A DNA stretch of 63,413 bases, counting the filler, from Intoshia linei (Eukaryota; Animalia; Orthonectida): assembly GCA_001642005.1 (NCBI GenBank). It is 8 parts of 8 records of this genome, joined end to end, with 100 filler letters (N's around TTAATTAATTAA, not from the genome) between each part and the next. Parts side by side here need not be neighbours in the genome. Positions count along the whole stretch, not along the records: positions 47,828 to 50,933 come from LWCA01002143.1; 7 more parts are not named here. The stretch is one strand, 5' to 3'. The translations under genes were made by a program, and so were the position numbers. Of the stretch, positions 3,401 through 50,933 are shown piece by piece. The number at the start of each line of letters is the position of its first letter. Positions within the stretch are counted from its first letter, which is position 1. Below the pieces are notes generated by a model. The model was not told the DNA's origin, did no database searches, and saw only the letters and a list, made by a program, of their open reading frames with translations.

Positions 3401-6400
3401 TACAATATTAATAAAAAATTCAAAATTTATATTATTTTTATATATATTAAATAATATATTAATACAAAAAATATTATTACCAATATGTGGAGGATTTCTA
3501 TATGCTCTAATAAATAAATAATATTATATCAAAATATAAATAAATTTTATTAATAACACAGTCCAACAAAATGACAACTTTTTTGAATGCAAGAGTAAAA
3601 TTTACATTTGCACTTGGAAGAGATTTTTATTATGAACAAGATGGTATAATCAGTTTTTCTGCATCAGGTTTAATTTTTTTTAAAATACGATTAAATTTAG
3701 AAAAAGTGCCTAAAATGGGCATATTTGAAGGTCAATAGAAATGTAAAATACAGTAGATTTATGGATTATTATATATGATTGGACATGGAAAAATCTTTGC
3801 GCTTCAACTTATAAAATTATTAACAGAATTGAATACTATTGAACGAAATAAAACGGAATATATAAAAAATATAATTATAATATACACTAAGCAAATAAAT
3901 GTTAGATCAGTGGTTTTCAACCTTTTTGTGTTCGACCCCCTTATAAACATAAAAAATTTTCGCGACTAAAAAATTTTCTATATACTCCAAACATCATATT
4001 AGTTCACATTAATGAAAATGAAAATATTAAAAAATCATATCCAGTTTTATTTATATTTTATACTGTGGTCACTGAGCACTACTCAGTACAATGTATTATT
4101 ATAATAACTAAATTTATTTTTTTCATGTGAAATTTGAGGTTCCATTTTTGATACAATTATTGATATTCTTGGCAGTGTATGCGATAAGGCGAGCCTCATA
4201 TCATCATTAACATTCAATCTGTTTATTGACTTTGTTTTTATATGAATAAGCGTATAAAATTCTGCTTCACACAGACAAGTTGACGGTAAAAATAGTAGCA
4301 ATATCAAAGCAATCGTAAATACATTTAGATATAAATCACTCATATATTATGTGATATGATATCACATTATTAAGTAGTTAGTGATTTTTTATAGAAAATA
4401 TTACGTGCAGTGGAATCATTTATTAAATCTTTTCATACTGTATTTTATCGGGAATATATGTAGTTTATATATTGAGTGAAGAAAAACATTTAAAATTGTA
4501 ATACAGAATGTAAAAATATTTCCTTAACATTATTACTGTCAAAATTCTATATTAAAATAAAAAAAATGTATTCATAAAATTTTCAAATTTTCACGACCCC
4601 CCGGTTGAAGACCATATGTTAGATCATTCTACATGTATAAATATATAAATTAGTTTTTCATATTGAATCTTATATTGTATTTTTAATTTAGAAATACCTC
4701 AGAAAGGCTGTAATTACTAATTATAGAAAATATTTGAGTAATCGTGTCATCTCGTTTAATCTTGTTTCTAATTGTGTTTAAGATGGCTTAGAAAACCTCC
4801 TATTTTAGATATTTTTGCAACTTTAACCTCAATTAAAAAAAATCTGGACGTGATTGAAAAATAATATTGGTATTACGTTGGCCAGTTCATTGAGACGAAA
4901 AAGATAATGTATTCATCATCCTTGATTTTTTATGGTGTTGAACTGTGTAATTAATGTGTAGTAATAAAAATGCTATATATAACTTACTTTAATTCAGATA
5001 AATTGATTTTATTAATTTTTTTCAAATTTTTCATTGCAATATCTAATTTTGGTTGAGCAGAATCCAGTTCAGATTTGTAACACTAATATAACATGTTATA
5101 AATACATACACCCTCAAACGGTGTAATTTCTATTAGCGATATATAATAGTATCAGACCAGGTTACTAAAAATAAAATGGGCACTACTAAACCAACAATAC
5201 AAACCCCTGGTATAAAATATGGGAATATATTTTTCCAAAATTATAAATCCTAAAAATTTTAGATTTGGACAAAATATATTCGAATTGTTAAAAAAACTAA
5301 ATAAAATGCCCGGGAAATAGGCGATAAAACATAAAATATAACTTATATGGGGTTTTCTGCAATTTTCTACACTACATTTGGCATTTTTTAAAATTGGCAA
5401 AAACCGTTTACACGTCACTTTAAATTGTACATTTGACCATTTTAAAGATACAGAAACAGGTGATTATCTAAATCAGTGGCACAAAAATTTTTGAAATGGG
5501 GGCCGGAATTAATAAAAAAATCTGCGGGCCAGATGGAAGCTATACATGACGATATTTTAAATTACAATTTAAATTTTAAGTTAATGAATAAATAAATTTC
5601 TCATGATCTAAAAATTACGAGTTGATAGTATATAGAATGGTATAGTATATTGATAGTATATATTTAAAATCTAAGTCGATGATATACATAAATTGTGTGA
5701 TAATTTGTAAGATATCACTCGTGTATTTTATAATATATTTGTAATTCGCGGGCCTGATAAAATTCAATTGCGGGCCGTAGTTTCGTGGCCACTGATCTAA
5801 ATGAACGGAAAAATAAGAAAAACATTGATTTAAAAGATAGCCCTAGTTAATTTAATTAGTATAATTTAATAAACAGAATAATCCATCTTATTAATTAACC
5901 ACGCCAATAGTGACATACTTTATATTAAATGTACTTTTTTGTTAATAATTATGTCATTATTTTATTACATATTAATTACATTTATTTGTTCTTGAATTTC
6001 AGATATTTTGGATTTCATTATCGATTGTTTGTTATTGATAATATTTAATACTTTTTTTATATCATTTTTTTGAGTGTTTAAGTTATTTATCAAGTTATCA
6101 GTTTCCTAAAAATTAATGAGTAATATATAATACACCTTACAATAGCTTTCAATTTAATTTTGGGACCAACATCCACTAGATCGTATTGCATTTTGTTAAT
6201 ATATTTATTTGATTCATTGAGTGATTTTAAACATTTCCTTAATGTTGTTATTTCATATAAATATCTTTTAGCATTATAATTAAAATTTTTACAAAACATT
6301 TCTATAAAATAAGCAATGCTAAAAAAACTTTTATCAAATTTATTTTTTTCTTTCAATTTTTTCATTGCAATTTGATGCATACTGTAAAAACAATTTACAA

Positions 6401-9400
6401 TTTTATAACGGTAGTTCTAAAAAAATTTATATAATGTTACATTTTGTTTACCAAAATGTATTTAGTTAAATCAGAATCAATATATTCATTCAAATAATGA
6501 ATTGAAATATTTTCAATTGTCTGACTTGTTAAATCTTTAAAATGTATTATTGTTAACTTGCTCAATATGGTTGCATCGAAAAATACTGTCATGTTACTTT
6601 TTATCGAAAAATCATTGATAATTAAGACTATACATAAATTTAATTTCAGTCTCTAAATAGATTTAATTAGCATATAGGTAGTAATATAATTAACAATATT
6701 ATACCATGTTCAAGTATTTAAAAATTTCATCATCATTTAAATGAAGATCTAATTTACTTGCGTATTCTTTTGTTAGTAAATACAGATTACTTTGTTTTTC
6801 TTGATCATAAAAATTTTCTATTTCTATACCATTCAAAATTGATAATATATCACTTAAAATAGCATCCTATAAAATATATATTTAAAAAATACCATGTTAG
6901 TAACATTTATTATGTCGTTATCAGTAATAACTAACACTTTTTTTTTATCTTGAAATACTACATTCTTTACAAGATTTTCAAAGTCATGTTTGAAATTTTC
7001 GTATGAATATGATGAAGAAAATGGCAATATTTCTTGTTGAATTCCACTTAGAGTTAAACAAAATTCAAGAGATCTGCGTTTACCAGTAGATTGACAACCA
7101 AACTAAAAATAATTCAAGTACAGTACGTTTGTTTGTTCACAAAACATTAAATTAATCTTAAAACCACTATAAGTGATATTTAACTAAAAGGTTATCCATA
7201 ATTTTATATTTATTTAAATTTAAACAATTCATATGTAAAAATTTACTATGCAGCTTTTGAACAATTTTTTGCAATCAAGAGATAATTTACTCACTGTGAA
7301 AACCTTCATACATAATATATACATTTTAAAATTTACATATTCCATCATTACTGATAAATTAATGTAGGGATAGTAAGTAAAAACAGTATTATAAGCTCAA
7401 ATCGAATCCAAGTTAAGAATTCATCAGATATAATAATACCCATATACAATGTATATATTATAGATCAGCGGTTCTCAACCTTTTTCAGGCCATGGCCTAA
7501 AAACGTTTTGCCTAAAATTCCATGGGCCACCTTAAAAAATCTACTTTTATTTACAGTAAAATTCTTTATTTATTTACATTTATACTAGTTAGTGACTGCC
7601 TTGGCATTGGTGTTTGTTGCACAATGCATCGTAATCAATTTCTATTAGTTTATTCAATCTTAATCGTATTATTCCTCGGTTGTTCACATCAAATTTTGAC
7701 CTCTTCTTACTAAAAATATCGACCACTGCTGAAAATCCAGCTTCTACAAGCCATGTTGTAGGAAAAGCAATAATGCTTGGTTGAACATTATCAAACACAA
7801 TTGGATTTAATTCTTGAATTCCACTAAATCCAAATACACCTTCCTTTTCTATTCGTCTTACTAATTTCAAATTTTCTTTTAAGTCCAAGAGTTTTTCTGT
7901 TAGTTAAGGACTGGTTTCATCATCTGGTTCAAATTTTAGAAGATCTGTAAACCAGACTGGATGCTTCATTTCCAGTATATCTTGGTTAGGGGTGTAAGTT
8001 TTATGCAATTTTTTTCGAAAATGCAAAAGTACACGCACACACGTTAAGGAGCCGGTTGAGTAGTACACAATTAAAAAAACGTTGGAGCTGAGCACTTCAA
8101 AATTTGAATAATTAAACATTATCATATTTCATATAGTAAATTTTAGTTATAATTAATTGTTATGACTTTATGACAATTAATTTTCGTGAAATGAGTTAAA
8201 TTGAAGTTTTTCAACAGAATCTAAATAATTATCAAATCAGCATTTATGCTTCGCTACAATGTAAGATTATGCATTTTTTGAAACTAATAATAAAAGAATT
8301 AATCAATGGTAACCCATTGGAAATTAATTTTTCATATAACAGCAATTTTATGGCTTAATACACCAAGTTTTTTTTAATGTTAAAAATTTTCTGTGGCCCA
8401 CAAGTGGGCCACATGGCCCATGTTGAGAACCACTGTTATAGATGTATGTATGATATACATTGTATATCAATGTTGACAAGATTTTAATATGATATAACAA
8501 AAAATATGAAAAATATTATTTATTATGCCAAATAAAGGGTTGATTCAATACATTAGGATTCACTATTGATATTTACCATGCATTTCATAGCATTAATATT
8601 TAATTTAAAATTTAATTCAATTTCTCACCAAAATATCATACATCTTAAAAATATTTTGTGAATTGATTGAGACTGATACAATTTGGTTTTTTAAGAGATA
8701 AATAGTTTTGTCTAGAAAATTACTATTTTTACCGACTCACTATGCAATTTAATATTAAATTTTTTGTGCATAAAATAAATCATTGATCACATTTTCCTAT
8801 ATTTTTTTCTCAAAATACCCATATATGCAAAAACCAAAAATACCAATTTTAATTTTTGAACTACGATTAATAAATAAATTAATAAAATGAAAAGGTACCA
8901 TCAATAAATTGCTTATTCCAGTTCCAATTGTACGTAAAATTTTGCATATATTCCTGGTAAAATCATCATATACATTAACATTGGAAACCTTCATAATGTA
9001 TTATTTATATACTTTTTAAATTTACCGTCGAATTGGATAATAAATATTTTGTGATGGCATTATTGACCGTAAATACATCTGATAAAGTATAATTAATTTT
9101 CTTAATACCAATTTCTTTTATTTCGTTGTGTTCATTTAATAAATTTATACAAACAATATTATTTAATTTTGATTTTTCAGGTGATATCTATTTTATAAAA
9201 ATTATCATCAAATTTCATATTTACCAAAAAATGTTTTTTTATAACAATGCCCATTTCATTTTCATATTTTTCTACATCTTCTTTCGATACAATCCTGTCC
9301 CTGAAGCATCTATTTGATTCATGCATCCATAATTGAATCCAATTATTTCTATCGTTAATGCAGTTTGGAACTATCATTCGTATTCCATAAAATAACTATA

Positions 9401-12400
9401 ATTTATATACTATTACTTTAATTACATTTAAATACACACATTATTATTAAAAATTAAAACTACCTTATATAAATCATGTAAATTAAAAATATGGTATGGT
9501 TTTTGTGCATTATAAGGAAATGTTTTCTTAATTCTGTTATATAAATCAGTTGAAGCAGTAATTGTAGAAAATATAGAATTTGCCACATCGTTGCAAAACG
9601 AATAAAATTGAAAAAAGATATCCATATTGTATTTAAATATTAATTCAATTGAAGAAGAAGATGGTTCATTATAAGAAATACAGTAAAATCTATTTTGTAA
9701 ACGATTGTTATAATTGTTAGAGGTGTATTTATCTGTACAAATAGAAGATATTAATCTGTAATTTTTGATGGTCTAATTCTTAAATTATTAATGTATACTT
9801 TTGTTGTTATATTAACCTTGTACATCCCTTTTTCATATATTTGATGTGAATCGATAAATTCTCGTAACGATTCATAAATATTTTTATGTTGAGTTTCAAC
9901 AACATTTGACATGCTCATGTCTGACAAATAATACAAAATCTAAAAAAGATACGTTTTAATGCACAACAATATAAATAATAACATTCAAATTTCATAATAA
10001 TAATAATAACATTCAAAGGAATCTTTAAAATCGTTAAAAATTTCCAGAATAAAATGTTCCCTTAAAGGCCTACAAAATTTTATTACTAAAATGAATATCA
10101 AAATATTTTAAAAATTGTAGAAAAAAATGTTCCCTTAAAAAAACTCACATAAACATTTGTCAAAAAATGAATAATTAATTATCGAAATCGATGATTATAT
10201 TTAAATATTTAAAAAATAATTTTATTATTTTGTATTTTTATTGTTGCATTTTAATCTTTAAACATTTTCGAATATCAATGTTTTTTCCTAATCAAAATTA
10301 AAGGTGAGCTCAAATTTTTATGTATTTAACAGATGAATATTAAGAAACACGACTCTAGAGAATGACACCATTTTAATTATACCTTTTTATTTGATGGAGC
10401 CGTATAAACATTTCTCTTGCTACGAATCAATTTATTAAAAAAATCTAATCTAAATTTTTCCAAAGTCGTGTAATTGTTGATATGTTGATTAGATAACATT
10501 AAATTATCTTGAGAATAAAAGTCATCTAAATACCAATTTAATTTTATAATATGTATTTGTAAGTACAATTTAATTTGTGTAAATTTATTCTTTTTATTAA
10601 TGTATTAATCAAATGAGATTTTCCTGTACCACTTGTACCTAAATTTGTATGTCTTGAATATTACATTTTGTGTTAATATATACAATTTATATTTTATGTA
10701 CAATTAAAATAACCAGATAATAAAATGGGAACATTTTCATTGATAGCCAGCATCATAAAAGATACCGATCTTTCTAATTCCAAGGTATTTACTGTAAAAT
10801 TTGTATATGCAGATTTCCAATTTTTAGCTTTTTCATCAATTGCATCGAATAAAATTTTATTCGATTTGACAACTTTATCATCAAAACTTTTTATTTTTCC
10901 ATCGCATTTATCAATGAAATAATTGTATAAATTCACGTCTTGTGGAAGAACAACACCTACATTAAAATTTTCATAAAATTCAATAATATCATCATAATAA
11001 TTAATAATAATATAAATTTAGTAATTATAATTATTTTAATTATATTGTTAATTCATTTACTTTTATATACATAATTTAAAGTTTATATACTTTATAGAAT
11101 TATAATTAATTAATGATACAAAAATTATGAGTCAATCCGGTACAATTCACAGGGTAAATTATTATAAGGCTTGTATTTATCGCGTCAGTATTTTAAATAT
11201 TAAAATGTCAGTATTTTAGATGCTTTGTCAGTAAAAATATTAAATTGTCAGTGTTTTAGGTGCCAGTTGACAAGGTGTCAGTATTTAAATTGAATATTCT
11301 GTATAAAATGAAACTGACAAAAAATGCTTTTGTAAAATATTCTATTTGTTCTCATAAAAAAATATTCTCTGGTGTGAACACTATAGAATATTTCTGATTG
11401 TTTTGTAATATAGTTTGTAGGTATAATATGGTATCTTCACATTTCAGTTTTAACTTGGTTCTGTAGTGGATGATATATTATTTCAAAAACTAGATTTTAA
11501 ATTTTTATACTGACACCTTGTCAACTCCAAAATCATCAAACTTACAATTCAATTTTTTTACTGAAAAAATATTTTATAAAATGTGTTTATTTCTATATAC
11601 TTTTTTTTGAGTTACTTACAATTTTCGATGAATCTAGTTATCATATTTATTGACAAAAATGCAATTATTGTCTGACAAGAAAGCAATTAAAAACTGACAA
11701 ATATGTAATTGAATACTGACAAAGTACATTTTATTACTGACAAATTAAATACTCCTCTTATTATAATAAAAAGTAGTTATTACAATTATTAAAAATTAGT
11801 GTTTCAAAACGATATTAAATATTGAACTTGTAAATTAATTTTAACGAAGCCACCAGAAATAAATCCATTATTAGGTTTGATTAAATTGGCTTTATTCTAT
11901 GAGAATTTGTTTAAAATTAAACATTAGCTTCGATAAAAGTGCATATGTTACAGGCAGTTTGGAAATCCAGGCAATTTGCAAATTGACTGATCCAGAGAAT
12001 ATTTTTTTATCCAATTCAATTGTATATTTATATTTAATTTTGTGTATTTTTAATCTCTTATTTTACTCTAATTAATTAGGTTAAATAGCAACGTGACTAA
12101 TAATTCAAATTTTCAAATTGCCTGGATTTCCAAACTGCCTGTAACACATACATATTCTTTGTCGTCAAAGTGCAATGTTCACGTTAGGTTATTTAAGTAA
12201 ATTAACACTTTTATTTATAATTTTAAAATTCAAATTCAATTATATTATAATTTACATTTACCCAATGTGGCCTGTTTTTCAAAAATCTGATACACAAAAT
12301 TAGAGAATGTATACTCAATTTCCTCCTTTCCAACATTAATTTGTTTAAAATTGGACCCTATGCTCCACAATATCGAAAATGCAAAAGTTTTTCCAATGAA

Positions 12401-15400
12401 ATATTTTAAATTATCAGAGTTAGATTTTATCAACCGTTGAGCAAAACTTTTATATCTAAAATATTATTTTTATTGAATCATTTCATATTATTTGTGGTAT
12501 GGCCTGGTCCATAATATACTCGTAACAAAATCGACCCATATTCGTAACCGTATTCGTGCATTGTTATCATAAATTTTACACTTCAAAATATAATTAAAAT
12601 ATTATCTTTTAACAAACTCTATTCTCTTAAATTTAACGATGAGTTAAAACTTCTATTACAATTTATATATGAGTTTAGTTAACATCAAATTTAACCCTTT
12701 CGTGACGAATGTATCAAATTTGATACATTTGTCATCTACGATATAAAATAAACTTTTCTATTCAATATTTTATAAATCTATGCAGTTATTTTAAAATAAA
12801 TTAACAAATGTAAATAATGACAAATCCTATTGTGTTTTAATCTAATGCCAGTCACTAAGTACGTCTTAAACATTAGTGTATGATGAAATTTTATATGTAT
12901 TAATTTTCATAATCTAGATACAACTATTGTGGATTAACGATTTTCACTATAAATAATTTAAATGTTGTTTATATAGCTATTGTTTTTAATTTAGAAGAGA
13001 AGACAACCGAGATAAAACAAACTGACCTAGCTAGCATTTAATATAAAGCAACGTTACTAATTAAGAGTCTTAAAAGATTCAAATTATAAATAAACATTTA
13101 TAATAACTAATAAACTAATAACTAATAAACTAATAACTAAGCTTGATATAACGTTATTTACATTTTATATATTTTTCAATAGTAATGGATTTTGATTACG
13201 AAGTTGAAAGAGACAAGTTTGGACGATTAATAAGAAATGTTTGTGTGATTCCCGATGCAGACCTGTCTGAGAATAACATTATAGAGGATAAAGACAACAC
13301 GAATTTTTCTGATGATAGTGATAGTATTGATGAAGATGACATACCATTAAACAAATTATATAAAAATCAGTGGAAAAAACAAAAAGGACCATTAATAGAG
13401 TTATCTATCCATAAAAACGAAAAAAATAAAAAACTATGCAATCCTATAGATTATTTTAATTGTTTTTGGACATATGACATGTTTGAAGAGACAGTGAAAC
13501 AGTCAAATTTTTTATGCTACACAATGTGGTTCAACGTTTGTAACCACTGTTGCAGAAATGGAAATTTTTTTTGGAATCATTATAAAAATTGATGTTATCC
13601 GATTGCTGTACTATAGAATGTATTGGTCGGCCGAATTTACCGTAGGCGATATATCTCATTGTATGACCTAGGATCGGTTCGAAGACATAAAAAAATACTT
13701 GCATTTTGCAAACAATGCACAGCTAGTGACAGACAAAAACAATCCAAAATTTGACCGCTCATACAAAATATCTAACATTCTTGAAATGTTCAGAAATGCA
13801 TGTCTTACTTCACCCCCTACTCAAATTAATTCAGTTGACGAACAAATTATACGATTTAAGGGAAAAACTGGAATGAAACAATATTTACCTAAAAAACCAA
13901 CAAAATGGCGACTTAAAGTTTTCTTTAGAAATTGAGATAATGGCATAATGAATAATTTTTATATATATTCGGAAAATACACCAAAAGTAGACAAATCTTG
14001 TGGAAATAATTCTGGGGACGTAGTGGTAAATTTATCTTAATCGTTGAATAAAATTGATCATATTTTGTGTTTTGACAATTGCTTTAATTCATACGTCCTC
14101 TAACATTTTCTAGCAAAACAAAAAATTTATTCTGTTGGAACAATGAGAAAGAATAGAATGCACGGAGCTCCTGTCATGGACGATAAAGTAATAAAACAAA
14201 AAGGTAGGGGAACTATGGACTATGCTTTCAACAATAACAAAAAAATCAATGTTGTTAAATGGTATGACAACAGACCAGTACAATTAGCGTCAAATTGTTA
14301 TGCCATCAACCCTGTTTCAAATTTTGTGCGATATGATCGTATCAGAAAAGCCATCATTCATGTAAAGTATCCGATGGTTATAAAATTTTATAACCAACAC
14401 ATGGGGTGGTAGACAAATTTGATATGCTTATGAGTCTTTATAGGAACAATCACAAAACTACAAAATGGTACATTGCAGTCTTTCACTGGATTTTAAACTC
14501 TTCAATTGTAAATGCATGGTTGCAATATTGTCGCGTTTGTAGAGATGGTGGAGAGCCTGCTTCAGATTTACTAACGTTTACATGTTCAATTTCAAGGTCA
14601 CTCATGCATTTTAATAAAATTCCTCTGATAGTTAAAAGAGGACGTCCATTAACTACAAAGAATAAATTACCAACAAGGACCTCTACTTATATTATAAATA
14701 ATATGGATGATGTAATTAGAAAGGATAATATAGGTCACTTTCCATTACCTACAGAAACGTTCAATAGGCGAAAATGTAAACTTTGTAGCAAACTCAGTAC
14801 CATGACTTGTATAAAATTTAAAGTATATTTATGTTGTAGGCATGAACGAAATTGTTTTATAAAATATCACCAATAAATATATACATGTATGTACATTTGT
14901 AATTTGAATAACACAATTTTAACTATGTAGATGACGAATGTATCATTTTTGATACACTGATTTTTATGTGTTTATTTTGATTTATTTTCAAATTTTTTTA
15001 TTTAATATGTAAATTCTACAATTATAACTAGAATTTACTGGAAAAATTATTATGTAGTAATATAGAAATATATTTGTCACGAAAAGGTTAAATTAAAGTA
15101 TTAAGTATATAGTACTATTAAAAAAATATATTCGTTTTTTTATGATATATGTTAAATTAATATATCATAAATATAAAATTTTTACTTTGAAACATTGTTG
15201 CATTCTATTTCATCATTAAAGCTCAAATAAGAACTCATTTTTCTATCAACATCTAAAATTAAAAATGTATATATCGATGACATATAATAAATATGACAAT
15301 TTACTATATATACATTTTTATTAGGTTTAAGAAATATAAATATTATTTTATTGAAAAAAAAGGTGTTTTTTTATCTTATACTTTATTAAAATATTGACTC

Positions 15401-18400
15401 ACTTAAAAATCAAAAATTAATCTGGTATTACAAGGCATATTATACACTTGCGAAATATATTACGTTTCACTAAAAAATGGTTTGCGAAATCCACATTGAA
15501 AATTACTGTTTTTTTCAATATTACCACTTATTGGTATTATAATAATATATTGCATTACTTTTATCTTCCATACTATCGTCAGCAAATAATGATTTCGTTG
15601 TCGTTTTAAATATAAAACATAATATTTTTATATGATATATATCATAAATTTCATTATAATTGGTATAATCAACGTATTTCCTTAAAAAATCTAAACAAGG
15701 TTGAAAAGCAACTTTAAATAGTTCCATAATATATTCCTTGTTGGTGTTTAATACATCACATAAACTGTATTTTATCCAAAAATCAAGATACTCTTTCCAT
15801 GTGAATGAATTTACATCCTAATTAATAATTATTATTAGTTACTTATATTATAATATAACCACATTTAATAAATTTTATAATGTTTACTAAATAAACGATG
15901 GAGCATCTACTAATAACGGCAGGGCTAGCAGTAGATAAATCATCAACTTCAAATATTAAACGTAAATTATTGTTAATATTTAAACGCTCTCCATTCGGTA
16001 AACATAATATTCTAGATGCATCAAGTAACGTATTTAAATTTTCCATCCATTCTGGATAAATTGGTCCTTAAATAAATAATTAATAATAAATGTTTGACAT
16101 TTACGTCATTTCATTGATGTTGTTTACAAAACAAATCACCAAAATTTAAATGCATATTATCAGTACGGGTAAAAATGGTTTGAAGATATAAAATTCGAAA
16201 AAAATAAATGAATTGACCTTATTTTATCACGGTCTCATTGGTCCACGACTTTTTTACTTTAGAACACACTTTTTCTTGTTTGGTGTCTTAAAATACAGTT
16301 CTTTATATAATCGAAAATTACCATCAAAAATTATGAATTTATTATTTAATAATTCAGTGGAATTGAAACAAGCAAAATTTGATTCTTTGTCTGATTGAAT
16401 GTGGTAGGCTTTAGGAGATGAATTTTGAGACGTTGGAGTAGTGGTTCGAGAATTTTCAATACCAAAGTTTGAACATATATAAGATTTTGAAGAAATGCTA
16501 GACTAAATTTTTAGTAAATATTAAATATTGTTACATTTTCTGATTCGATGCATAAGCGTATCACATTTCCAATAATTCCATCATGCCATTCAGTTGTTGT
16601 ACCATCAAAAAAACCATATAATTCATTAATATCAACACTGCCTGGGTTAAGAACATATGATAGTTTATTAGATTTTTTCAGTTTTTGAGTTATTTTTAAC
16701 ATTACCTCTTCAGGTAAAGAATCGTACGTATAATCATAAATGTTTATGTTAAAAATTCCATTCATTTTTTTCAGTAACTCAACAGTATATTGTAAATTTT
16801 TTACAATATTTGTAATTGTTGATTTCCCACTTAAACTAGGACCAATCAGTATCAATCCGTGATTAATAATTAGTTGGTTATAGTATTGCAAACATTTTTC
16901 TTTCTGTATTATGGATTCATTCAAATGATACAAATTGTAATTAATACTAATTGCCATTTCTAATATAGAATTTTTATTATATTGGACAATACTATTTTCA
17001 CCAAATATATTTTCTATTAAATATTGTAGTTTATCCATGTCCTTCTTTAATAATTTGGACTTGTTAGCCTCAATTATTGCCTGAATAACAATAGTCGATT
17101 CATCCTGTAAAGACAAATTTTGTTTTTTTTTACTTTTAATTAATGATATAATGTGTACGATTAATGCAATAGATCTCAAACTAAAATCATAATGATATTG
17201 TTGAGAAAATTGCTGTTGGGCCAACTCAAACATTTGACTAGTTTTTTTTGATAATATTTTTGCATTGCCAAATCCTTCTGACAATAATAATACTTCTAGA
17301 ATTAACTCATAGTCTGGAACAATCATAGCAATGAATCTAAATTGTGATTTTAAATTATCTGGAAGATTTGCCTTATCACAATAGTTGACTGTATTTAAAG
17401 ATACAAATATAGCAGAGGTTTTGTCTAAATGTACATCTTTACCATTCAAATTAAATCTTTGATAATTAGCAATCTTTGCTAATTTAATTGATTGAATCAT
17501 TTGAGCTGAAGAAGATAGTTCTCTTATACCAAGTCTATTTATTTCATCTAGACAGATCCAAGAACCAGTAGTTATTGTGCCAATCAAATATTTGTTTATT
17601 GTTTCAATATTTATAGAATTGGAACAATTAAAATTTATACATCGCTTTCCAATCATTTTTGCCATGTTTTTAATTGTTTCTGTTTTTCCAGTTCCCGTCG
17701 GGCCGTATGTAGCTACTCCGTAATACATATTAAAAGCTGTTGATATAGTTAATTGAGCCCTATCTGTTAACGGGGTTATAACTAATCTATTCGATGGACC
17801 TATATACTCATATCCATAGCAATATTTAGTATCATTTTGACAAATTACACAATCATTTATCTCCTTTTTCCAGTATATACGTAATCGTTTCAACCATTTA
17901 TAGTCATTTATTGATGAAATTTTAGCACTATTTAAATCATTTATAACATCTCTAAAATACACGTTAACAATCAACAAGCTTTTCAAAGTTATTTTCTGAG
18001 AAATAGTAGTATTTAATGTGTTAATCAAGTTTGAAATTTTAACAATTTGATTCAAAATGACATTAATTCCGTCATTCAGATTATATTTAGTTTCATTTAA
18101 TATTAAAGATTCAATATATGTATTAAAATGTATCTCATTAGAAATAACAACGGCTTGGCTAGGGTTATTTAGAATCCATTCTTTTGCAACATCGGGAGAA
18201 TATGACGTTAAGCATGATTTTATGGACTTTTTAACACTATCGTACATGACTGATTCAAGATATGTCATCCACTGTTCAACACTTCCTCTTATTCTGATGG
18301 GCCTAACTAAATCAAACTTTTCGTTTTCTACAGATACAAATTGAATAATAGATTCATAATTTTGATTTTTTTCCGTATATTTATCAACAATTAATTTATT

Positions 18401-21400
18401 TATATTTGTAAAACATTTCAATAAAAAAGGTTGAATATTTTCGACATTATTAGAATATGATAGCATTGTAATGATATCACTATTACTTAAAAAATAAAAC
18501 CGGGCAAATAAGTTTCGTTTTGATTCAATTATTAAAACAAATGCTTTAATTGTTTTTTCCAAAATAGAGTTAATATTTGATAAAATTTCATACAAATTTA
18601 TTTTAGTGGTTGCATGAATAACATTTTGATTATCTGATATATTTAGCATTATTTCTTGCCAAATTTTTTCACAGTTAAGATATTTTTTCGATTCATTCTT
18701 CAATTGCTTTTGAATGTCGGTAATTTTAAAAATACCAGAAAGATTTATGATATTCCTTTGAGTAACATTCCATTCCTCTACTGTTTTAATTGATAACTTG
18801 ATTTTATACAGCCAATCTGAAACAGAATTTTCAATAGGTTTTACATATTTTGATGATAGTATAATTGATAATGTTATTTTACTTTCTTCTAGCTGTGGAA
18901 GCAAAACATCTTCTAAACCCTGCACAAGCATTAAATTCATATTTGTATTAGTAACTATGTTTAATGTTGTATTTTTCCATAGATTGACGATTACTGTCAA
19001 CATGTTAGTTAAAGATGCTTCATGAGATGCCAATGATGAAATTCTATGTAATTCAACTGCATATGTGGTTACATCCATTTTAATAAATTCTTCAATATTA
19101 ATATTTTTTTTGACATTAAAAGATACCATCATTCGACCAGTTAGCATTTCACCAATATCTTTCCAATGTGAATAGTTTAAATTGGGATTTCGCAAGTCAA
19201 TTATACAGGGTAATAATTTATTAAATTCATTTACATTTTTTTTTAAATTATCCAATAGGCAATTTTTAGGTAAAAACTGTTCCATTATTTCAATTTTTTT
19301 AGACAAATTTTGAACAAACTTTGTTATATCACTTACATTTAATTCATTTAAATAGTCATTATATAATTTGTTACTAAATGTTTTCCATGAAAAATAGCTA
19401 TTCCAAAGTAATTCTCTGAATGCAATATTTTTATCCACAGATGATAATAAAGAGTGAACATTTTTTATTACTTCTGATTCTTGTAAATTTGAATTTATTG
19501 TATATGCTGTTTTTTTATTACCAATGTTTCTTATAATCTTAATTGTTTTGTTATACGATGTATACTTTTCGGATTTTTCTTTTAATTCATTATTTTTAGA
19601 AATTAATTTTTTTACTTCATTGTATACTGCAACAAGATTATTCATATCTGGATTTAATAATTTTTTATTCAATATTTGCGCTTTCAGTTCAATAATTTCA
19701 GATAATATTTGATCAAAATTATTATCGAGGATATTACCAAATTTAATTGCATTTTCTTCTAATTTGGCTTCAGAGTAAATAAGGCTATTCTAAAATAATT
19801 ATTGACGTATTCAAAAATTAAAGCATATCAAAAATACAACTTTTTCAATATTTTTGAAAGTTAAAAATTAAAGACATTTACACCCGTGATTTTTTGGGGT
19901 CGGATTTGTTACGGGATCTTTACAGGAAACTGTATATAGCAGGGTTATCAACATTTTTGGAACTATTTCCCCTAGATTAAAAAAATTGAATTTTTGCAAG
20001 ATTATGTCCCTTTCCTAAAAATATTTATTACGGACTTTTTAATAATTTAATTTAATTAAAAATAAGCCAAAAAAAATTTAATCTAATTTTGACCATTACA
20101 ATAATTGATGCTATATTAAATGTTATATTAAACAGAATTTTAGGTAATTAGAAAACACGTTTTTTCGGGAAATAAATCGCCCCATTATTAAAAAATCGTC
20201 CAGGTTGAGAATCCCTGGTATATAATTATTCAATTACTTATTATACTTTTAATAAAAAAGTATACCTTAAGTTTTCGCATAGTCCTAGCAACTGATTTAA
20301 ATAAAGCTAGTTCAAGGTCATTTACATGAATATTATATTTAAAAATTAATTTATATAAATCATTCACAATTTTTGATTTTTGCTCGTAGACTGACATATC
20401 AGCTGAAATTTCTTTTATATATTCAACATGTTGAATAAATTGATATATAAAGGTAATTTCTATGCTTAATCTATTGTTAGCATCCTAAACTATTTAATTA
20501 TTATAAAAATATTAAAAATTATACATTATTATAAAACAGGGGTGTCAATTATGCGGCCCCAATTATGGAATGTGCGGCCCTTATAATGTGCGTCATAATA
20601 TAAATTTTTATTTTTATAACAATTTTTACACATATTTCTTTTTTTACAATTTTTTCATATATTTTTCATGATTTATTTATTCATGATTACAATTTTAACA
20701 TTATTTGTACACCTATGCCATTATTATTGTTTTTATTTCGTTTTACAAATTGAAATTATTATAAATTAATTAAAACTGTTTTTTTTGCGCGGTCCGCGTA
20801 ATAATTTTTTTCACATTTGGCCCTCCAAGAAAATTGAGTCTGACACCCCTGTTTTAGAATTTAAAACTATAAAATAATAATAATAATTCAATTATTTTAA
20901 AATATATAAATTACACGCAAATCATTGGAAATTTCATTATTTTCTTGTAATGCTATTTTTGGTAGTTTATCGTTGATAAATATTAATATTTTTTCAATCA
21001 AATCACAATATTTTGATTTATATTTTTGTATATTTATTTTATATAATCCTATTATAGATATCGTTTTCATATATTTTATTTGATTCAACTAATTAAACAA
21101 TATGATTTTACATTATAATGTGGCATTAATGCTTATTATATAAAATAAATCGGAACTGGATCCAATTTAACTTCTTTAGACGTTCATTGAAAATGAATTA
21201 AAGTGAAATTTGACAAAATAATAGTGATAAAATATACAAAATAAAATTGGTATTTTTCAGTTTATCCTGGTAAAATTTCAATCTAAAGGTTGGATACCAC
21301 TACCATATACAGTAGAGACAGGTTAAACGGACCGATTTTATCAACTGGTTCATAATGGTTTTAACATTTTTATGCGTGTAACCATAGATATACTAAAAAA

Positions 21401-47827: not shown

Positions 47828-48158
47828 AATACAAAATTTCAACCCCAGAAATCTACATATTCCCGGTGAAAAATAATTTTTTACATATTATTAATTAATA
47901 TTTTTCAAATATTTCGATTAAAATAAAAATTGAAAATGAAATTGATACTACAATTTCAAAAAAAATATGCATTGAACGTCTACACATTTCCAATAAAGAA
48001 ATATTGATGAAAATGTATATTATTTATTGATAGTTAATAATGAGTAACATTTTTAATTAATATTTTATTATTGAATGTATTTTTTTGGTATAATTAAATA
48101 AGTCCACCATCGGCAGAGCTAGGTGCTGTTTGTACGTAGTACATAACTGCCAACCTAG
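47828..48158 (+). mobile_element. Helitron 3' portion
   Basis: CGGCAGAGCTAGGTGCTGTTTGTACGTAGTACATAACTGCCAACCTAG|T. Confidence 0.8.
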
Positions 48159-48248
48159 TTTAATATATTTTACTATTGTATTCAATCACTTTGATTTATT
48201 TCTTAAATATATCGAAGCCGGGTTTTATTGTAAAATGTTAAATTTTAC

Positions 48249-50933
48249 CTTCACAGAAATTATGAGTCATGTTCCAGCTACAATTCGTTTCTATGCATTT
48301 ATTTTGGTTTGATATTGTATAACACGCATCTAGAATATGAAAAATTTAAATATTTTTTAAGATTTAAAATGCAATACATTAAATGTATTTAATTAACAAT
48401 TAATATATTCATATTCACGTGGAAATTTTGTACGGAATCAGACAATGATATGAAAAATTCTTTTTTTGGTTAAGTATATCAATATGTATTCTAAAAAATG
48501 AGTTGAAAGGTAATCCCGGATTCTATCCGATTTCTATATTTCAAAATGGCAAATTTAAGATAGTTATTTAATTGTACTTTATAATTAACGTTTCATAATT
48601 AATCGTGACGGTTGATTTTTTAAACAAAAAAATTAAGAATGAAATGAATAAAATCATACATGTCACTGAAATTTGTGTAAAAATCCAATATACGAGATGT
48701 GATTATGTATTTGTTCAATTTAAAAAGATAATAAAATTTTAAAGTTGTGAATTTTAAGCTTCAAAAATTAGCATTTCAGAAGTGAAATTTTTTGCATTCA
48801 ATTTCGAAAATCAGTATTTTCCCGTAAAAATTAACACTGTGTGTGTTCTAACATTTAAAATTTGTTAGCATTACTATATTTTTCGCATTCTATTAGTACG
48901 TATATGAAGTATATAAACATAGTATATAAGGTGTCTTGTGGGTATCTGTGTCTGTGTGTGTCTGTGCGTATGTGTGTGTCTGCGTATCTGTGTGTTGACA
49001 TTTATTGAAAAAATGACTGTCGCAGGATCTAAAAAACCCACTTGTTAATACTGTTTTTCTCAGAGCGTGTTTTTATCTATTTTCAGTTACAAAATTTGAG
49101 TCCTTCATGGTCAAAAACACAATTTCCCCTTTTGTTTAAAAAAAATCAACCCAAAATAAACTAAAAAATTTAATAAAACATACATTCTGGAACGCGTTTT
49201 AGAAGCATTAATATTATCGTTCATCTCTGGAATTTATGTTATTCATGACAATTTTTAGAATTAATGATAAGAGTAAGACTTTTTATGTAAAAACGATCAA
49301 GAACTTTTGTATTTTGGGATTGAATTTTATATAGGTAAAGCATTAAATTTTTTGTAGTATTAAAAACTTCCGGACTCAATAGAAAGTGTACTGTTTGTAC
49401 GAAGTATATAACAGTCAAAGTAGTTATTTAATAAAACATTAATAATAAAATTAACATTCAATTTTATAATAATAATGAAAATAAGTAATAATAATACAGT
49501 TAGTAGTAATGTAGTAGTACTAGTTAGATTATTAATATCTTGAGTAAGTAATTACCTCTACAAATTAATGATTCACTGTTCCATTGACAACCCTTTGATT
49601 TACAATCGAGATTATTACTTGTATTATAACACATTTCTATGCACAGAATAGATTATCAAAATAATAAAATCATTAAATTAGTATATTACCACGACAATAC
49701 ATTTGCAAATCATTCCACGCACAATTTGTAGCTACGCATTGATTTTGATCTTCTGCACTGTAGCACGACTCTGACAATTAATATATTTAATTAATGTATT
49801 TAATAAGTTTAAAAGTAATTAAAAAATTAAATGAACCTTTCATACATAACTGGGGCAACAAATTGTAACTGTTTCGATTTAATTCAAATATTTTTAAAAA
49901 ATTAAAAAGCACATTCTCCCCATAAAAAAAAATATATAATTATAATCACTAAATATTTGAAAATTTTTAGCAAAACTACAATATTACAGTTTACTTTTAA
50001 TGATAAATCAATTTTGATAGCATTCATTATATTAATTAATTAACTTAATTTGAAAAAAAGTTCATTTAAATTTTAAAAAGATACACTAACGCTTACTAAT
50101 CCAACGAAATTATTATAAGGTGTAATATTAGGGCATATGGTACATTTATTGTGATATTACAATACTAAATTACATTATGGTATCAATATTACCTTTGCAA
50201 TTATTGAATTCGTGACTCCATTGGCAACCTTTTTGCATACACTCCTGATTATCCACTACAGTTGAGCAGTTTTCTAGTTATTATCATTATTACGCATAGA
50301 TGAATCATCATTTACGAATTAATTTTATTTTATATTTTAAGCCTTAAAAGACTTTAATACCTAAATTATAAGCAAAAATTTTATATTTTATGTTTATCTA
50401 TGAAAAATCTGTCTAATCTAATCTAAATTTATTTATTGAAAAAATTGACATTTGCAGGATTTTAAAAAACCAATTTCTAATAAAATTTTTCCTAAAATGT
50501 GTTTTTATTCTATTTTTCAGTTTCATTTAGAATCTGAGTCCTTCAGAATCAAAAATCCAATTTCCCCGTTTGTTTAAAAAAATCAGCTTAAAACCAACAC
50601 TACATTACATTTTGTTTAAATGAAAACAGCCCTAGAATTTAAAACAAATTACCAATAGTACATAAGTATCCTGTTAAAACACAAATCACCCCCAATCGTC
50701 TCAATTGAAAATAGGCCTAACTGAATTAATCGCACTCTTAAGACTTTAAAAAATATTACCATAACAATAATTTGAAGACCTATTCCACCTACAGTTCCAT
50801 GTCAAACAATCCTGTTCTTGATTAAATCGGTAGCATGGTTCTGATTAATTATAAGTGTTAAAATAATTTAAATAAAATTATTAAAATGTATTTATTTCTT
50901 AAAATTACCATTACAAATCATTAAAGATGAACT
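48249..50933 (-). CDS. Fragment of an uncharacterised Cys-rich repeat protein, one 27-aa C-x8-C-x4-C-x-W-x6-C module per 81-nt exon
   Basis: Exons 50760-50840, 50193-50273, 49690-49770, 49556-49636 and 48249-48329 are all AG|81 nt|GTAA, phase 1-1. A partial exon at 50909-50933 is cut by the gap. Confidence 0.88.
48915..49423 (+). mobile_element. Non-autonomous Helitron (degenerate) with a GT microsatellite
   Basis: TATATAAG + (GT/CTGTGT)n near the 5' end; 3' CTGTTTGTACGAAGTATATAACAGTCAAAGTAG|T. Confidence 0.7.

What the first reader, a model, noticed from the sequence alone, without database searches (positions are those of the whole stretch)
48249..50933. Hidden array of identical-length 81-nt exons, each encoding a divergent 4-Cys module
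Seen in sequence: five complete minus-strand exons of exactly 81 nt, all phase 1-1 with AG acceptors and G|GTAA donors, plus a sixth cut by a gap (..SSSLMICN). They translate to PCYRFNQEQDCLTWNCRWNRSSNYCY, NCSTVVDNQECMQKGCQWSHEFNNCK, SCYSAEDQNQCVATNCAWNDLQMYCR, MCYNTSNNLDCKSKGCQWNSESLICR and ACYTISNQNKCIETNCSWNMTHNFCE. The spacing C-x8-C-x4-C-x-W-x6-C is invariant while the loop residues are highly variable, and N-glycosylation sequons are frequent (NRS, NCS, NTS, NMT). The exons are too short to appear in the ORF track. Inference: an extracellular disulfide-bonded repeat protein whose module resembles a trefoil/PSI domain missing one disulfide. Symmetric exons allow any exon to be skipped in frame, so this could be a combinatorially spliced, diversified surface or secreted protein family.
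Basis: partly seen in the sequence, partly recalled or inferred. Interest (0 to 1): 0.85.

Follow-up and report, generated by a model that had tools for sequence, protein, structure and literature searches.

The report
Orthonectid secreted tandem mini-PSI/trefoil-like repeat gene
This is a real, strongly transcribed but unannotated gene, most likely of the parasitic worm Intoshia linei, in which each 81-base exon encodes one 27-residue, two-disulfide module of an apparently secreted repeat protein; the proposed combinatorial splicing is not shown.

Summary
There are five minus-strand exons of exactly 81 nt and a sixth cut by the piece edge. All are phase 1-1 with AG acceptors and G|GTAA donors. 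Each encodes [E/D]-x-C-x8-C-x4-C-x-W-x6-C-x.

The gene is real. Three RNA-like public runs each hold one contig that joins all five exons at exactly the predicted junctions, at high depth. A DNA run holds the unspliced locus.

A profile of the modules found only two hits among 1.84 billion representative proteins. One is a partial hypothetical protein of the orthonectid Intoshia linei. It is a co-linear paralogue with a signal peptide and five more 81-nt exons. The other is a marine-sediment metagenome fragment.

Pfam gives only sub-threshold trefoil hits for the modules, and a sub-threshold PSI hit for the metagenome fragment. An AlphaFold model (pLDDT 77) shows a helix plus a beta-hairpin. 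Its weak best structural matches are PSI domains, trypanosome VSG C-terminal domains and trefoil domains.

I read it as a lineage-restricted secreted protein built from a minimal trefoil/PSI-like core. Its function is inferred: an extracellular matrix, coat or glycan-binding rod.

Every assembled transcript includes all five exons in order. Contig breaks at exon junctions still leave alternative connections open.

The parts
50909..50933 (-). Partial exon, the tail of a module (..SSSLMICN), cut by the edge of the piece. It corresponds to module 4 of the paralogue.
   Evidence: It is 91% identical to L001:11248-11282. In run X2, 16 loose letters at 50841 match the 16 bases that precede this exon's final G, which supports the junction to the next exon (table 7).
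50841..50908 (-). Intron of 68 nt (GTAAT..CAG), 10% GC.
   Evidence: The junction is supported by the X2 loose end.
50760..50840 (-). 81-nt exon encoding module E-PCYRFNQEQDCLTWNCRWNRSSNYCY.
   Evidence: It lies in the spliced contigs of X2, X4 and X5 at record positions 3-84.
50274..50759 (-). Intron of 486 nt. It holds a copy of an interspersed repeat at about 50425-50640.
   Evidence: The joint 50273 to 50760, skipping 486 with ends CT..AC on the + strand, is seen in X2, X4 and X5. The repeat is shown.
50193..50273 (-). 81-nt exon encoding module E-NCSTVVDNQECMQKGCQWSHEFNNCK.
   Evidence: record positions 85-165, no other letters.
49771..50192 (-). Intron of 422 nt.
   Evidence: The joint 49770 to 50193 is seen in three runs.
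49690..49770 (-). 81-nt exon encoding module E-SCYSAEDQNQCVATNCAWNDLQMYCR.
   Evidence: record positions 166-246, no other letters.
49637..49689 (-). Intron of 53 nt, close to the median intron size of 57 bp reported for I. linei.
   Evidence: The joint 49636 to 49690 is seen in three runs. The median intron size comes from PMC6543705.
49556..49636 (-). 81-nt exon encoding module E-MCYNTSNNLDCKSKGCQWNSESLICR.
   Evidence: record positions 247-327, no other letters.
48330..49555 (-). Intron of 1226 nt. It is enlarged by a second copy of the interspersed repeat (about 48990-49200) and an imperfect TG-rich microsatellite (48937-48993).
   Evidence: The joint 48329 to 49556 is seen in three runs. 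The repeats are shown.
48249..48329 (-). 81-nt exon encoding module D-ACYTISNQNKCIETNCSWNMTHNFCE.
   Evidence: record positions 328-408, no other letters. The contigs run on 243-436 nt into further modules that lie outside the piece.
47828..48248 (-). Start of the next intron, at least 421 nt and beginning GTAAAATT. It is filled with very high-copy repeats, which probably explain why the assembly breaks here.
   Evidence: Summed word depth in DNA run X1 is 7,000-18,600 here, against about 8.7 for single-copy parts (table 2). No module motif is present.

Best explanation
The piece holds the middle of a real, spliced and strongly transcribed gene. It most likely belongs to the orthonectid parasite Intoshia linei. 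The gene encodes a secreted protein made of a head-to-tail string of 27-residue modules, with one module per 81-nt phase 1-1 exon. Each module is predicted to fold as a short helix packed on a beta-hairpin. Two disulfides probably staple it, inferred as Cys1-Cys3 and Cys2-Cys4. This is the minimal core shared by trefoil (P) domains, plexin/semaphorin/integrin PSI domains and trypanosome VSG C-terminal domains. Only three residues separate the last Cys of one module from the first Cys of the next, so the array should form a fairly stiff, N-glycosylated rod. The family is restricted to this lineage in the databases searched, and it has at least two co-linear paralogues. The major transcript includes all five exons in order, so splicing is constitutive. 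The function is inferred, not shown. The most likely role is an abundant extracellular structural or adhesive component, such as cuticle, matrix or surface coat. Glycan binding of the trefoil kind is possible.
For: Shown:
- Exon anatomy and chance control.
- Spliced contigs in runs X2, X4 and X5 (651, 844 and 653 nt; word depth 2726, 60 and 30) use all four predicted GT..AG junctions between the five exons. The fifth junction has a 16-letter loose end. DNA run X1 holds the unspliced stretch 49172-50403 and none of these joints.
- The contigs continue in frame into a further module, E-N-C-D-I-T-T-N-S-E.. (table 7).
- A profile search of 1.84 billion representatives found only OAF66235.1 of Intoshia linei (E 4e-28) and one metagenome fragment.
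- That I. linei locus (L001) has a signal-peptide exon ending in phase 1, followed by five 81-nt exons of the same kind. Its module 4 ends SSSLMICN like the piece's partial exon, but identity is only 73-91%, so it is a paralogue.
- GC content (24.5% against 21-31%) and short introns fit I. linei.
- AlphaFold on a 10-module alignment gave pLDDT 77, with a helix at residues 9-14 and a hairpin at 17-20/25-28.
- The best structural matches are PSI domains of plexin A1/A2/A4/C1, Sema2a/2b and RON, VSG C-terminal domains, and trefoil domains of TFF3 and MGAM.
- Pfam gives trefoil hits at E 0.0045-0.056 for 3 of 5 modules.
- ECOD has an X-group named 'Trefoil/Plexin domain-like' (PMC9387206).

Inferred: the disulfide pairing, the rod shape, glycosylation and the function.
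Against: - All structural matches are weak (Z 2.0-3.4, Foldseek E above 1), and so small a model cannot score high.
- The Pfam hits are below the gathering score.
- The signal peptide is seen only in the paralogue. The 5' and 3' ends of this gene lie outside the piece, so a membrane anchor cannot be excluded.
- The run and organism names were coded, so the stage or tissue of expression is unknown.
- Assignment of the piece to I. linei rests on the paralogue, the composition and the year of the DNA run.
- Contigs break at exon junctions. This is unexplained and could mean that other isoforms or near-identical paralogues exist.
Confidence: 0.75

Rival explanations
1. One reading: a combinatorially spliced, diversified surface or secreted protein. 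Symmetric phase 1-1 exons would be skipped in many combinations to give a repertoire of isoforms.
For: All exons are symmetric (1-1) and of equal length, so any subset stays in frame. The loops are highly variable. The RNA-like contigs break at exon junctions. All three spliced contigs start 2 nt before exon 2. The X2 contig ends exactly 243 = 3 x 81 nt past exon 6. An 86-nt contig covers only an exon-2-like module. This pattern is what alternative connections would give in a de Bruijn graph.
Against: In three runs the one contig over this locus contains all five exons in genomic order. No joint that skips one of them is listed. Alleles, near-identical paralogues or repeated exons produce the same contig breaks. 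Symmetric 1-1 exons are the rule for extracellular modules and do not by themselves imply skipping (established knowledge of exon shuffling).
Confidence: 0.12
2. A true but very divergent member of the trefoil (P-domain) family. The modules would be degenerate trefoil domains that have lost the Cys1-Cys5 disulfide, and the protein would act as a mucin- or glycan-binding lectin like the TFF peptides.
For: Pfam trefoil is the only family hit for 3 of 5 modules (E 0.0045-0.056), aligned to profile positions 11-33 of 43. This is the region Cys2..Cys3..Cys4-Cys5-Trp/Phe. TFF3 and the MGAM trefoil domain appear among the structural matches at Z 2.2-2.3. The missing Cys are those that pair with each other in trefoil domains (family knowledge).
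Against: Scores of 13.8-17.3 bits are under the cut-off of 21. Two modules give no trefoil hit, and the whole paralogue scores E 1. PSI and VSG domains match the model as well or better. The stretch after the Trp is shorter than in trefoil domains. Glycan-binding residues were not tested.
Confidence: 0.1
3. The sequence is not a functional gene of the organism. It could be a contaminant (host or other), a pseudogene array or an assembly artefact.
For: The piece is a short contig that ends in high-copy repeats. One RNA-like run (X2) carries a different organism label from the DNA run.
Against: Spliced and unspliced forms are found in separate studies, with 0-1 differences. All exons have open frames and all four Cys and the Trp are conserved despite saturated synonymous divergence. 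A paralogue lies on a 13.8-kb contig of the I. linei assembly with the same composition and a neighbouring WD40 gene.
Confidence: 0.03

Closest known systems
PSI domain (plexin/semaphorin/integrin repeat, Pfam PF01437)
   Same: A small extracellular disulfide-stapled module with a helix followed by a hairpin that carries a C-x-W motif. PSI domains of plexin A1/A2/A4/C1, Sema2a/2b and RON are the most frequent structural matches (TMq 0.60-0.64; Z 2.0-3.3). The metagenome relative with identical Cys spacing gives a sub-threshold PSI hit (E 0.038).
   Different: PSI domains have about 50 residues and 8 Cys (4 disulfides) with C-x-W-C. Here there are 27 residues and 4 Cys, and no Cys follows the Trp. 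No Pfam PSI hit was found for any I. linei module, even at E up to 10. PSI domains occur singly or interspersed with other domains, not as long pure tandem arrays.
Trefoil (P) domain (Pfam PF00088), as in TFF1-3 and maltase-glucoamylase
   Same: The spacing C-x8-C-x4-C-x-W mirrors Cys2..Cys3..Cys4-Cys5-Trp/Phe of the trefoil motif (my reading of the Pfam alignment range, profile positions 11-33). There are sub-threshold Pfam hits and weak structural matches. In vertebrate TFF genes, too, the domain is encoded by one symmetric exon (recalled from memory, not tested here).
   Different: Two of the six Cys are missing, the third loop is shorter, and scores fall below the family threshold. Trefoil proteins have 1-4 domains, not strings of nine or more.
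C-terminal domains of trypanosome variant surface glycoproteins
   Same: A small module of similar size. It is the top structural match (Z 3.4, rmsd 2.3 A over 37 residues; also Z 3.2 and 2.3) and is part of a parasite surface coat.
   Different: There is no sequence relationship for the I. linei modules. Only a weak Pfam Trypan_glycop_C hit was seen, for the metagenome protein (E 0.37). VSG has one or two such domains followed by a GPI anchor, not an array. The organisms are unrelated.
OAF66235.1, hypothetical protein A3Q56_06048 (partial), Intoshia linei
   Same: It is built from the same module with the same 81-nt phase 1-1 exons, and the order of modules is co-linear with the window gene.
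   Different: It is a different locus (73-91% nucleotide identity in the shared exons). It is unnamed and uncharacterised. Its annotated model contains a 39-residue non-module exon (L001:11460-11576) that the window gene lacks.

Membership tests
Trefoil (PF00088) | Match to the family profile at or above the gathering score (21 bits) | tested here: not met
   17.3, 14.8 and 13.8 bits for three modules and no hit for two; the paralogue P0001 scores 9.8 bits, E 1.
Trefoil (PF00088) | Six conserved Cys forming three disulfides (1-5, 2-4, 3-6) | tested here: not met
   Only four Cys per module. The match covers profile positions 11-33 of 43 only. The disulfide pairing itself cannot be tested here.
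Trefoil (PF00088) | Three-loop fold with a helix and a hairpin | tested here: inconclusive
   The model has a helix plus a hairpin. Matches to TFF3 (Z 2.3) and MGAM residues 13-55 (Z 2.2) are weak.
PSI (PF01437) | Match to the family profile at or above the gathering score (23.1 bits) | tested here: not met
   No PSI hit for any window module or for P0001 at E up to 10. Only the metagenome protein P0002 reaches 14.8 bits.
PSI (PF01437) | About 50 residues with eight conserved Cys, including C-x-W-C | tested here: not met
   27 residues and four Cys; C-x-W is followed by N, S or D, never by C.
PSI (PF01437) | PSI-like three-dimensional core | tested here: inconclusive
   PSI domains make up 7 of the 12 rows with Z of 2 or more and the best Foldseek rows. 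However, Z is only 2.0-3.3 and E is above 1.
Intoshia linei 27-residue module family (this gene and OAF66235.1) | [E/D]-x-C-x8-C-x4-C-x-W-x6-C-x modules, each on an 81-nt phase 1-1 exon, in tandem | tested here: met
   Five modules plus a partial one in the window and five in L001. Profile E 4e-28.
Secreted protein | N-terminal signal peptide | tested here: inconclusive
   The 5' end of the window gene lies outside the piece. The paralogue begins MHLLINATILLLIISCSISAQ, a hydrophobic leader by eye. No signal-peptide predictor was available.

The most novel reading that the evidence does not exclude
This is an orthonectid-specific family of very highly expressed secreted proteins built only from a 27-residue, two-disulfide minimal version of the trefoil/PSI fold. 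It acts at the parasite surface or the parasite-host interface as a glycosylated coat or glycan-binding effector. Its equal-length symmetric exons let module number and order vary, either by alternative splicing or by rapid exon gain and loss between paralogues. That variation would explain why the RNA contigs break at exon junctions.
Probability: 0.18. Interest if true: 0.7.

Novelty: new variant of a known kind. Interest (0 to 1): 0.5.

Why it matters
Orthonectids are extremely reduced parasites, and the molecules they use to interact with their hosts are almost unknown. This is an abundant secreted repeat protein that gene prediction has almost entirely missed. The only database entry is one partial 'hypothetical protein'. 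That makes it a concrete candidate for a major extracellular or host-facing product of the parasite.

For protein evolution, it shows the two-disulfide helix-hairpin core shared by trefoil, PSI and VSG C-terminal domains working as a free-standing 27-residue unit, multiplied exon by exon. It is also a reminder that arrays of 81-nt exons in AT-rich genomes escape ORF-based annotation.

Tried and rejected
- Pfam on single modules gave nothing above threshold.
- A PDB sequence search with the module profile gave only a chance match to a cullin neddylation protein, E 1.5.
- Rfam and tRNA scans of the piece found nothing.
- The search for homologous proteins with P0001, and with the module region of P0002, returned only the queries themselves. 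The length window of that tool means longer or shorter relatives were not examined.
- The ESM Atlas gave no usable hit by features. Its structural neighbours were a ciliate hypothetical protein (TM 0.53), EGF, PSI and attractin clusters. These are leads only.
- Folding the whole paralogue P0001 without an alignment gave pLDDT 35.5, which is unusable, so nothing is claimed about how modules pack.
- dN/dS between modules is uninformative because synonymous sites are saturated (pS 0.57-1.2).
- Literature searches found no description of this family.
All searches used single exons by reference, or natural database proteins.
- To reach the 30-residue minimum of two tools, the first row of alignments A2 and A4 is exon 49556-49636 read on for 10 codons into its intron. 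Those columns are not profile positions, and in the model they have low confidence.

Full report
**Observation.** The piece (47828-50933, 24.5% GC) carries five exons of exactly 81 nt on the minus strand: 50840-50760, 50273-50193, 49770-49690, 49636-49556 and 48329-48249.
- Each is preceded by AG and followed by GTAA. A partial exon at 50933-50909 (..SSSLMICN) is cut by the piece edge.
- Every exon starts with two bases that complete a codon begun by the final G of the preceding exon. The junction codons read E, E, E, E and D.
- The true repeat is therefore 27 residues: [E/D]-x-C-x8-C-x4-C-x-W-x6-C-x.
- The four Cys and the Trp are invariant. Overall amino-acid identity between modules is 26-41% and nucleotide identity 42-58%, with synonymous sites saturated.
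- The exact motif occurs five times, against 0.0 on average in 2000 dinucleotide-preserving shuffles.
- Exons are richer in G+C (28-41%) than introns (10-25%).

**Is it a gene?** One search for public runs and one laying of their contigs answer this.
- Runs X2, X4 and X5 come from a 2024 study and their kind is not on record. Each holds a single contig (651, 844 and 653 nt; word depth 2726, 60 and 30).
- Each contig lies on the piece as five consecutive blocks that coincide with the five exons.
- The joints skip 486, 422, 53 and 1226 bases. The skipped parts begin CT and end AC on the + strand, which is GT..AG on the minus strand.
- Four exons match without a single difference.
- DNA run X1 (2016) holds the unspliced stretch 49172-50403, which spans three exons and their introns, and it shows none of these joints. 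The joined form is therefore RNA, not a processed copy in the genome.
- The 68-nt intron after the partial exon is supported by a loose end in X2. Its 16 letters match the 16 bases that precede the partial exon's final G.
- Beyond exon 6 the contigs run on for 243-436 nt that are not in the piece. The first 30 letters read in frame E-N-C-D-I-T-T-N-S-E, the start of another module. The gene therefore has at least nine or so modules.

**Whose gene, and what family?** I built a profile from the five modules. The exons were not joined. The first row was read 10 codons into its intron only to reach the tool's minimum length.
- The profile was scored against 1.84 billion representative proteins. Only two proteins passed E 0.001.
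- P0001 (E 4e-28) is OAF66235.1, 'hypothetical protein A3Q56_06048, partial' of Intoshia linei (Orthonectida). It lies on the 13.8-kb contig LWCA01000995.1.
- That locus (L001) has a first exon encoding MHLLINATILLLIISCSISAQTDIGG, which ends in phase 1. Five 81-nt exons of the same design follow.
- The fourth of these ends SSSLMICN, like the piece's partial exon. The fifth (EPCYKANNEQDC..) corresponds to the piece's first full exon (EPCYRFNQEQDC..).
- Nucleotide identity is only 91% and 73%, so the two loci are co-linear paralogues and not the same place.
- The composition of L001 (21-31% GC) fits the piece. The 53- and 68-nt introns fit the reported I. linei median of 57 bp (PMC6543705).
- I take the piece to be I. 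linei with about 90% confidence. The run labels were coded and cannot confirm it.
- The second hit, P0002 (E 1e-4; hhalign probability 77%), is a fragment from a marine-sediment metagenome. It has two modules of identical Cys spacing. It may be a true distant relative or a convergence.
- Word-based searches with P0001 and P0002 found only the queries themselves.
- No paper in the library describes the family.

**Fold.**
- Pfam gives only sub-threshold trefoil hits for three of five modules: E 0.0045-0.056 and 13.8-17.3 bits against a cut-off of 21, covering profile positions 11-33 of 43.
- No PSI hit was found for the modules. P0002 gives a sub-threshold PSI hit (E 0.038).
- AlphaFold2 on an alignment of ten modules gave mean pLDDT 77, with all 27 module residues at 70-90. 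The model has a helix at residues 9-14 and a hairpin at 17-20/25-28.
- Foldseek against the PDB ranks plexin A1 and Drosophila Sema2a/2b PSI regions first (TMq 0.60-0.64, rmsd 1.7-2.4 A, 24-31% identity), but with E above 1.
- The exhaustive VIA search ranks VSG C-terminal domains (Z 3.4, 3.2, 2.3), PSI domains of plexin A2/A4/C1, Sema2b and RON (Z 2.0-3.3) and the trefoil domain of maltase-glucoamylase (Z 2.2). The second look adds TFF3 (Z 2.3).
- Each match is weak, as it must be for about 30 residues.
- The list nevertheless consists almost entirely of three kinds of domain. As I recall from SCOP, these are grouped as the fold 'Trefoil/Plexin domain-like', whose common core is alpha+beta with two conserved disulfides.
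- ECOD has an X-group of that name (PMC9387206).
- The module, with four Cys, a helix and a hairpin, looks like that bare core. By analogy the disulfides would be Cys1-Cys3 and Cys2-Cys4. This pairing is inferred, not tested.
- Membership of PF00088 or PF01437 was tested and not met.

**How it probably works.**
- Shown: an abundant spliced mRNA, tandem modules, and a signal peptide in the paralogue.
- Inferred: a secreted, N-glycosylated, disulfide-stapled rod.
- The sequon position W-N-x-[ST] recurs in 4 of 10 modules.
- Only three residues lie between the last Cys of one module and the first Cys of the next.
- I think an extracellular structural or adhesive role is most likely, for example in the cuticle, the matrix or the surface coat of the parasite. 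A trefoil-like glycan-binding role is the main alternative.
- Nothing here tests function or stage of expression.

**Splicing diversity.** The three assembled transcripts all contain the five exons in genomic order, and no skipping joint between them is listed. That speaks for a constitutive major isoform. Contigs drop rare variants, however, and one pattern remains unexplained:
- All three contigs start 2 nt before exon 2.
- The X2 contig ends exactly 3 x 81 nt after exon 6.
- An 86-nt contig covers only an exon-2-like module.
- Contigs with G at 50798 carry more depth than the contig tied to this locus.

Such breaks mean that an exon has more than one neighbour in the data. The cause could be alleles, near-identical paralogues, repeated exons or alternative splicing. 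Raw or long reads are needed to tell these apart.

**Verdict.** Combinatorial splicing is not shown. The family is a lineage-restricted and almost unannotated variant of a known kind of extracellular disulfide module.

Noticed in passing
window 48990-49200 and 50425-50640 (minus strand): Two copies of an interspersed repeat of about 200 nt, 82% identical, sit in two different introns of the gene. Summed depth in the DNA run is 290-1900 against 8.7 for single-copy sequence. The element seems to account for the long introns in a genome whose median intron is 57 bp. It is not tRNA-derived according to ARAGORN.
   Followed up: partly
window 47828-48243: A very high-copy repeat region. Summed word depth is 7,000-18,600 in DNA run X1, and it is also abundant in the RNA-like runs. 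Related copies lie in L001 (7142-7254, 81%). It probably explains why the contig ends here.
   Followed up: partly
window 48937-48993: An imperfect TG/CA-rich microsatellite with units of about 8 nt lies inside the 1226-nt intron. Reads appear to be cut there in the DNA run.
   Followed up: no
window 50760-50841, position 50798: Exon-2-like contigs carrying G instead of C at 50798 have more depth than the contig linked to this locus (X2: 5659 of 8385). One of them, 86 nt long in X5, has five differences. A closely related allele or paralogue seems to be expressed even more strongly.
   Followed up: no
L001:11460-11576: The annotated model of OAF66235.1 includes a 39-residue exon (AKRTISDQ..INFPEF) that is not a Cys module. 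It lies in the 2.35-kb gap between modules 4 and 5. The window paralogue joins the corresponding modules across a 68-nt intron with no such exon, so the annotated exon may be a prediction artefact.
   Followed up: partly
L002 (BARU01032310.1, 785 nt; protein P0002): A marine-sediment metagenome fragment encodes two modules, CSEITEAVECVTAGCSWNATTEIC, with exactly the same spacing, separated by a run of Glu. A beta-rich region follows. It has no relatives in the word-based search.
   Followed up: partly
L001:1050-2174 and 4777-6407: The neighbours of the paralogue on the I. linei contig are a WD40/PROPPIN-like gene and a 413-residue protein with no Pfam hit. Both are on the opposite strand.
   Followed up: no
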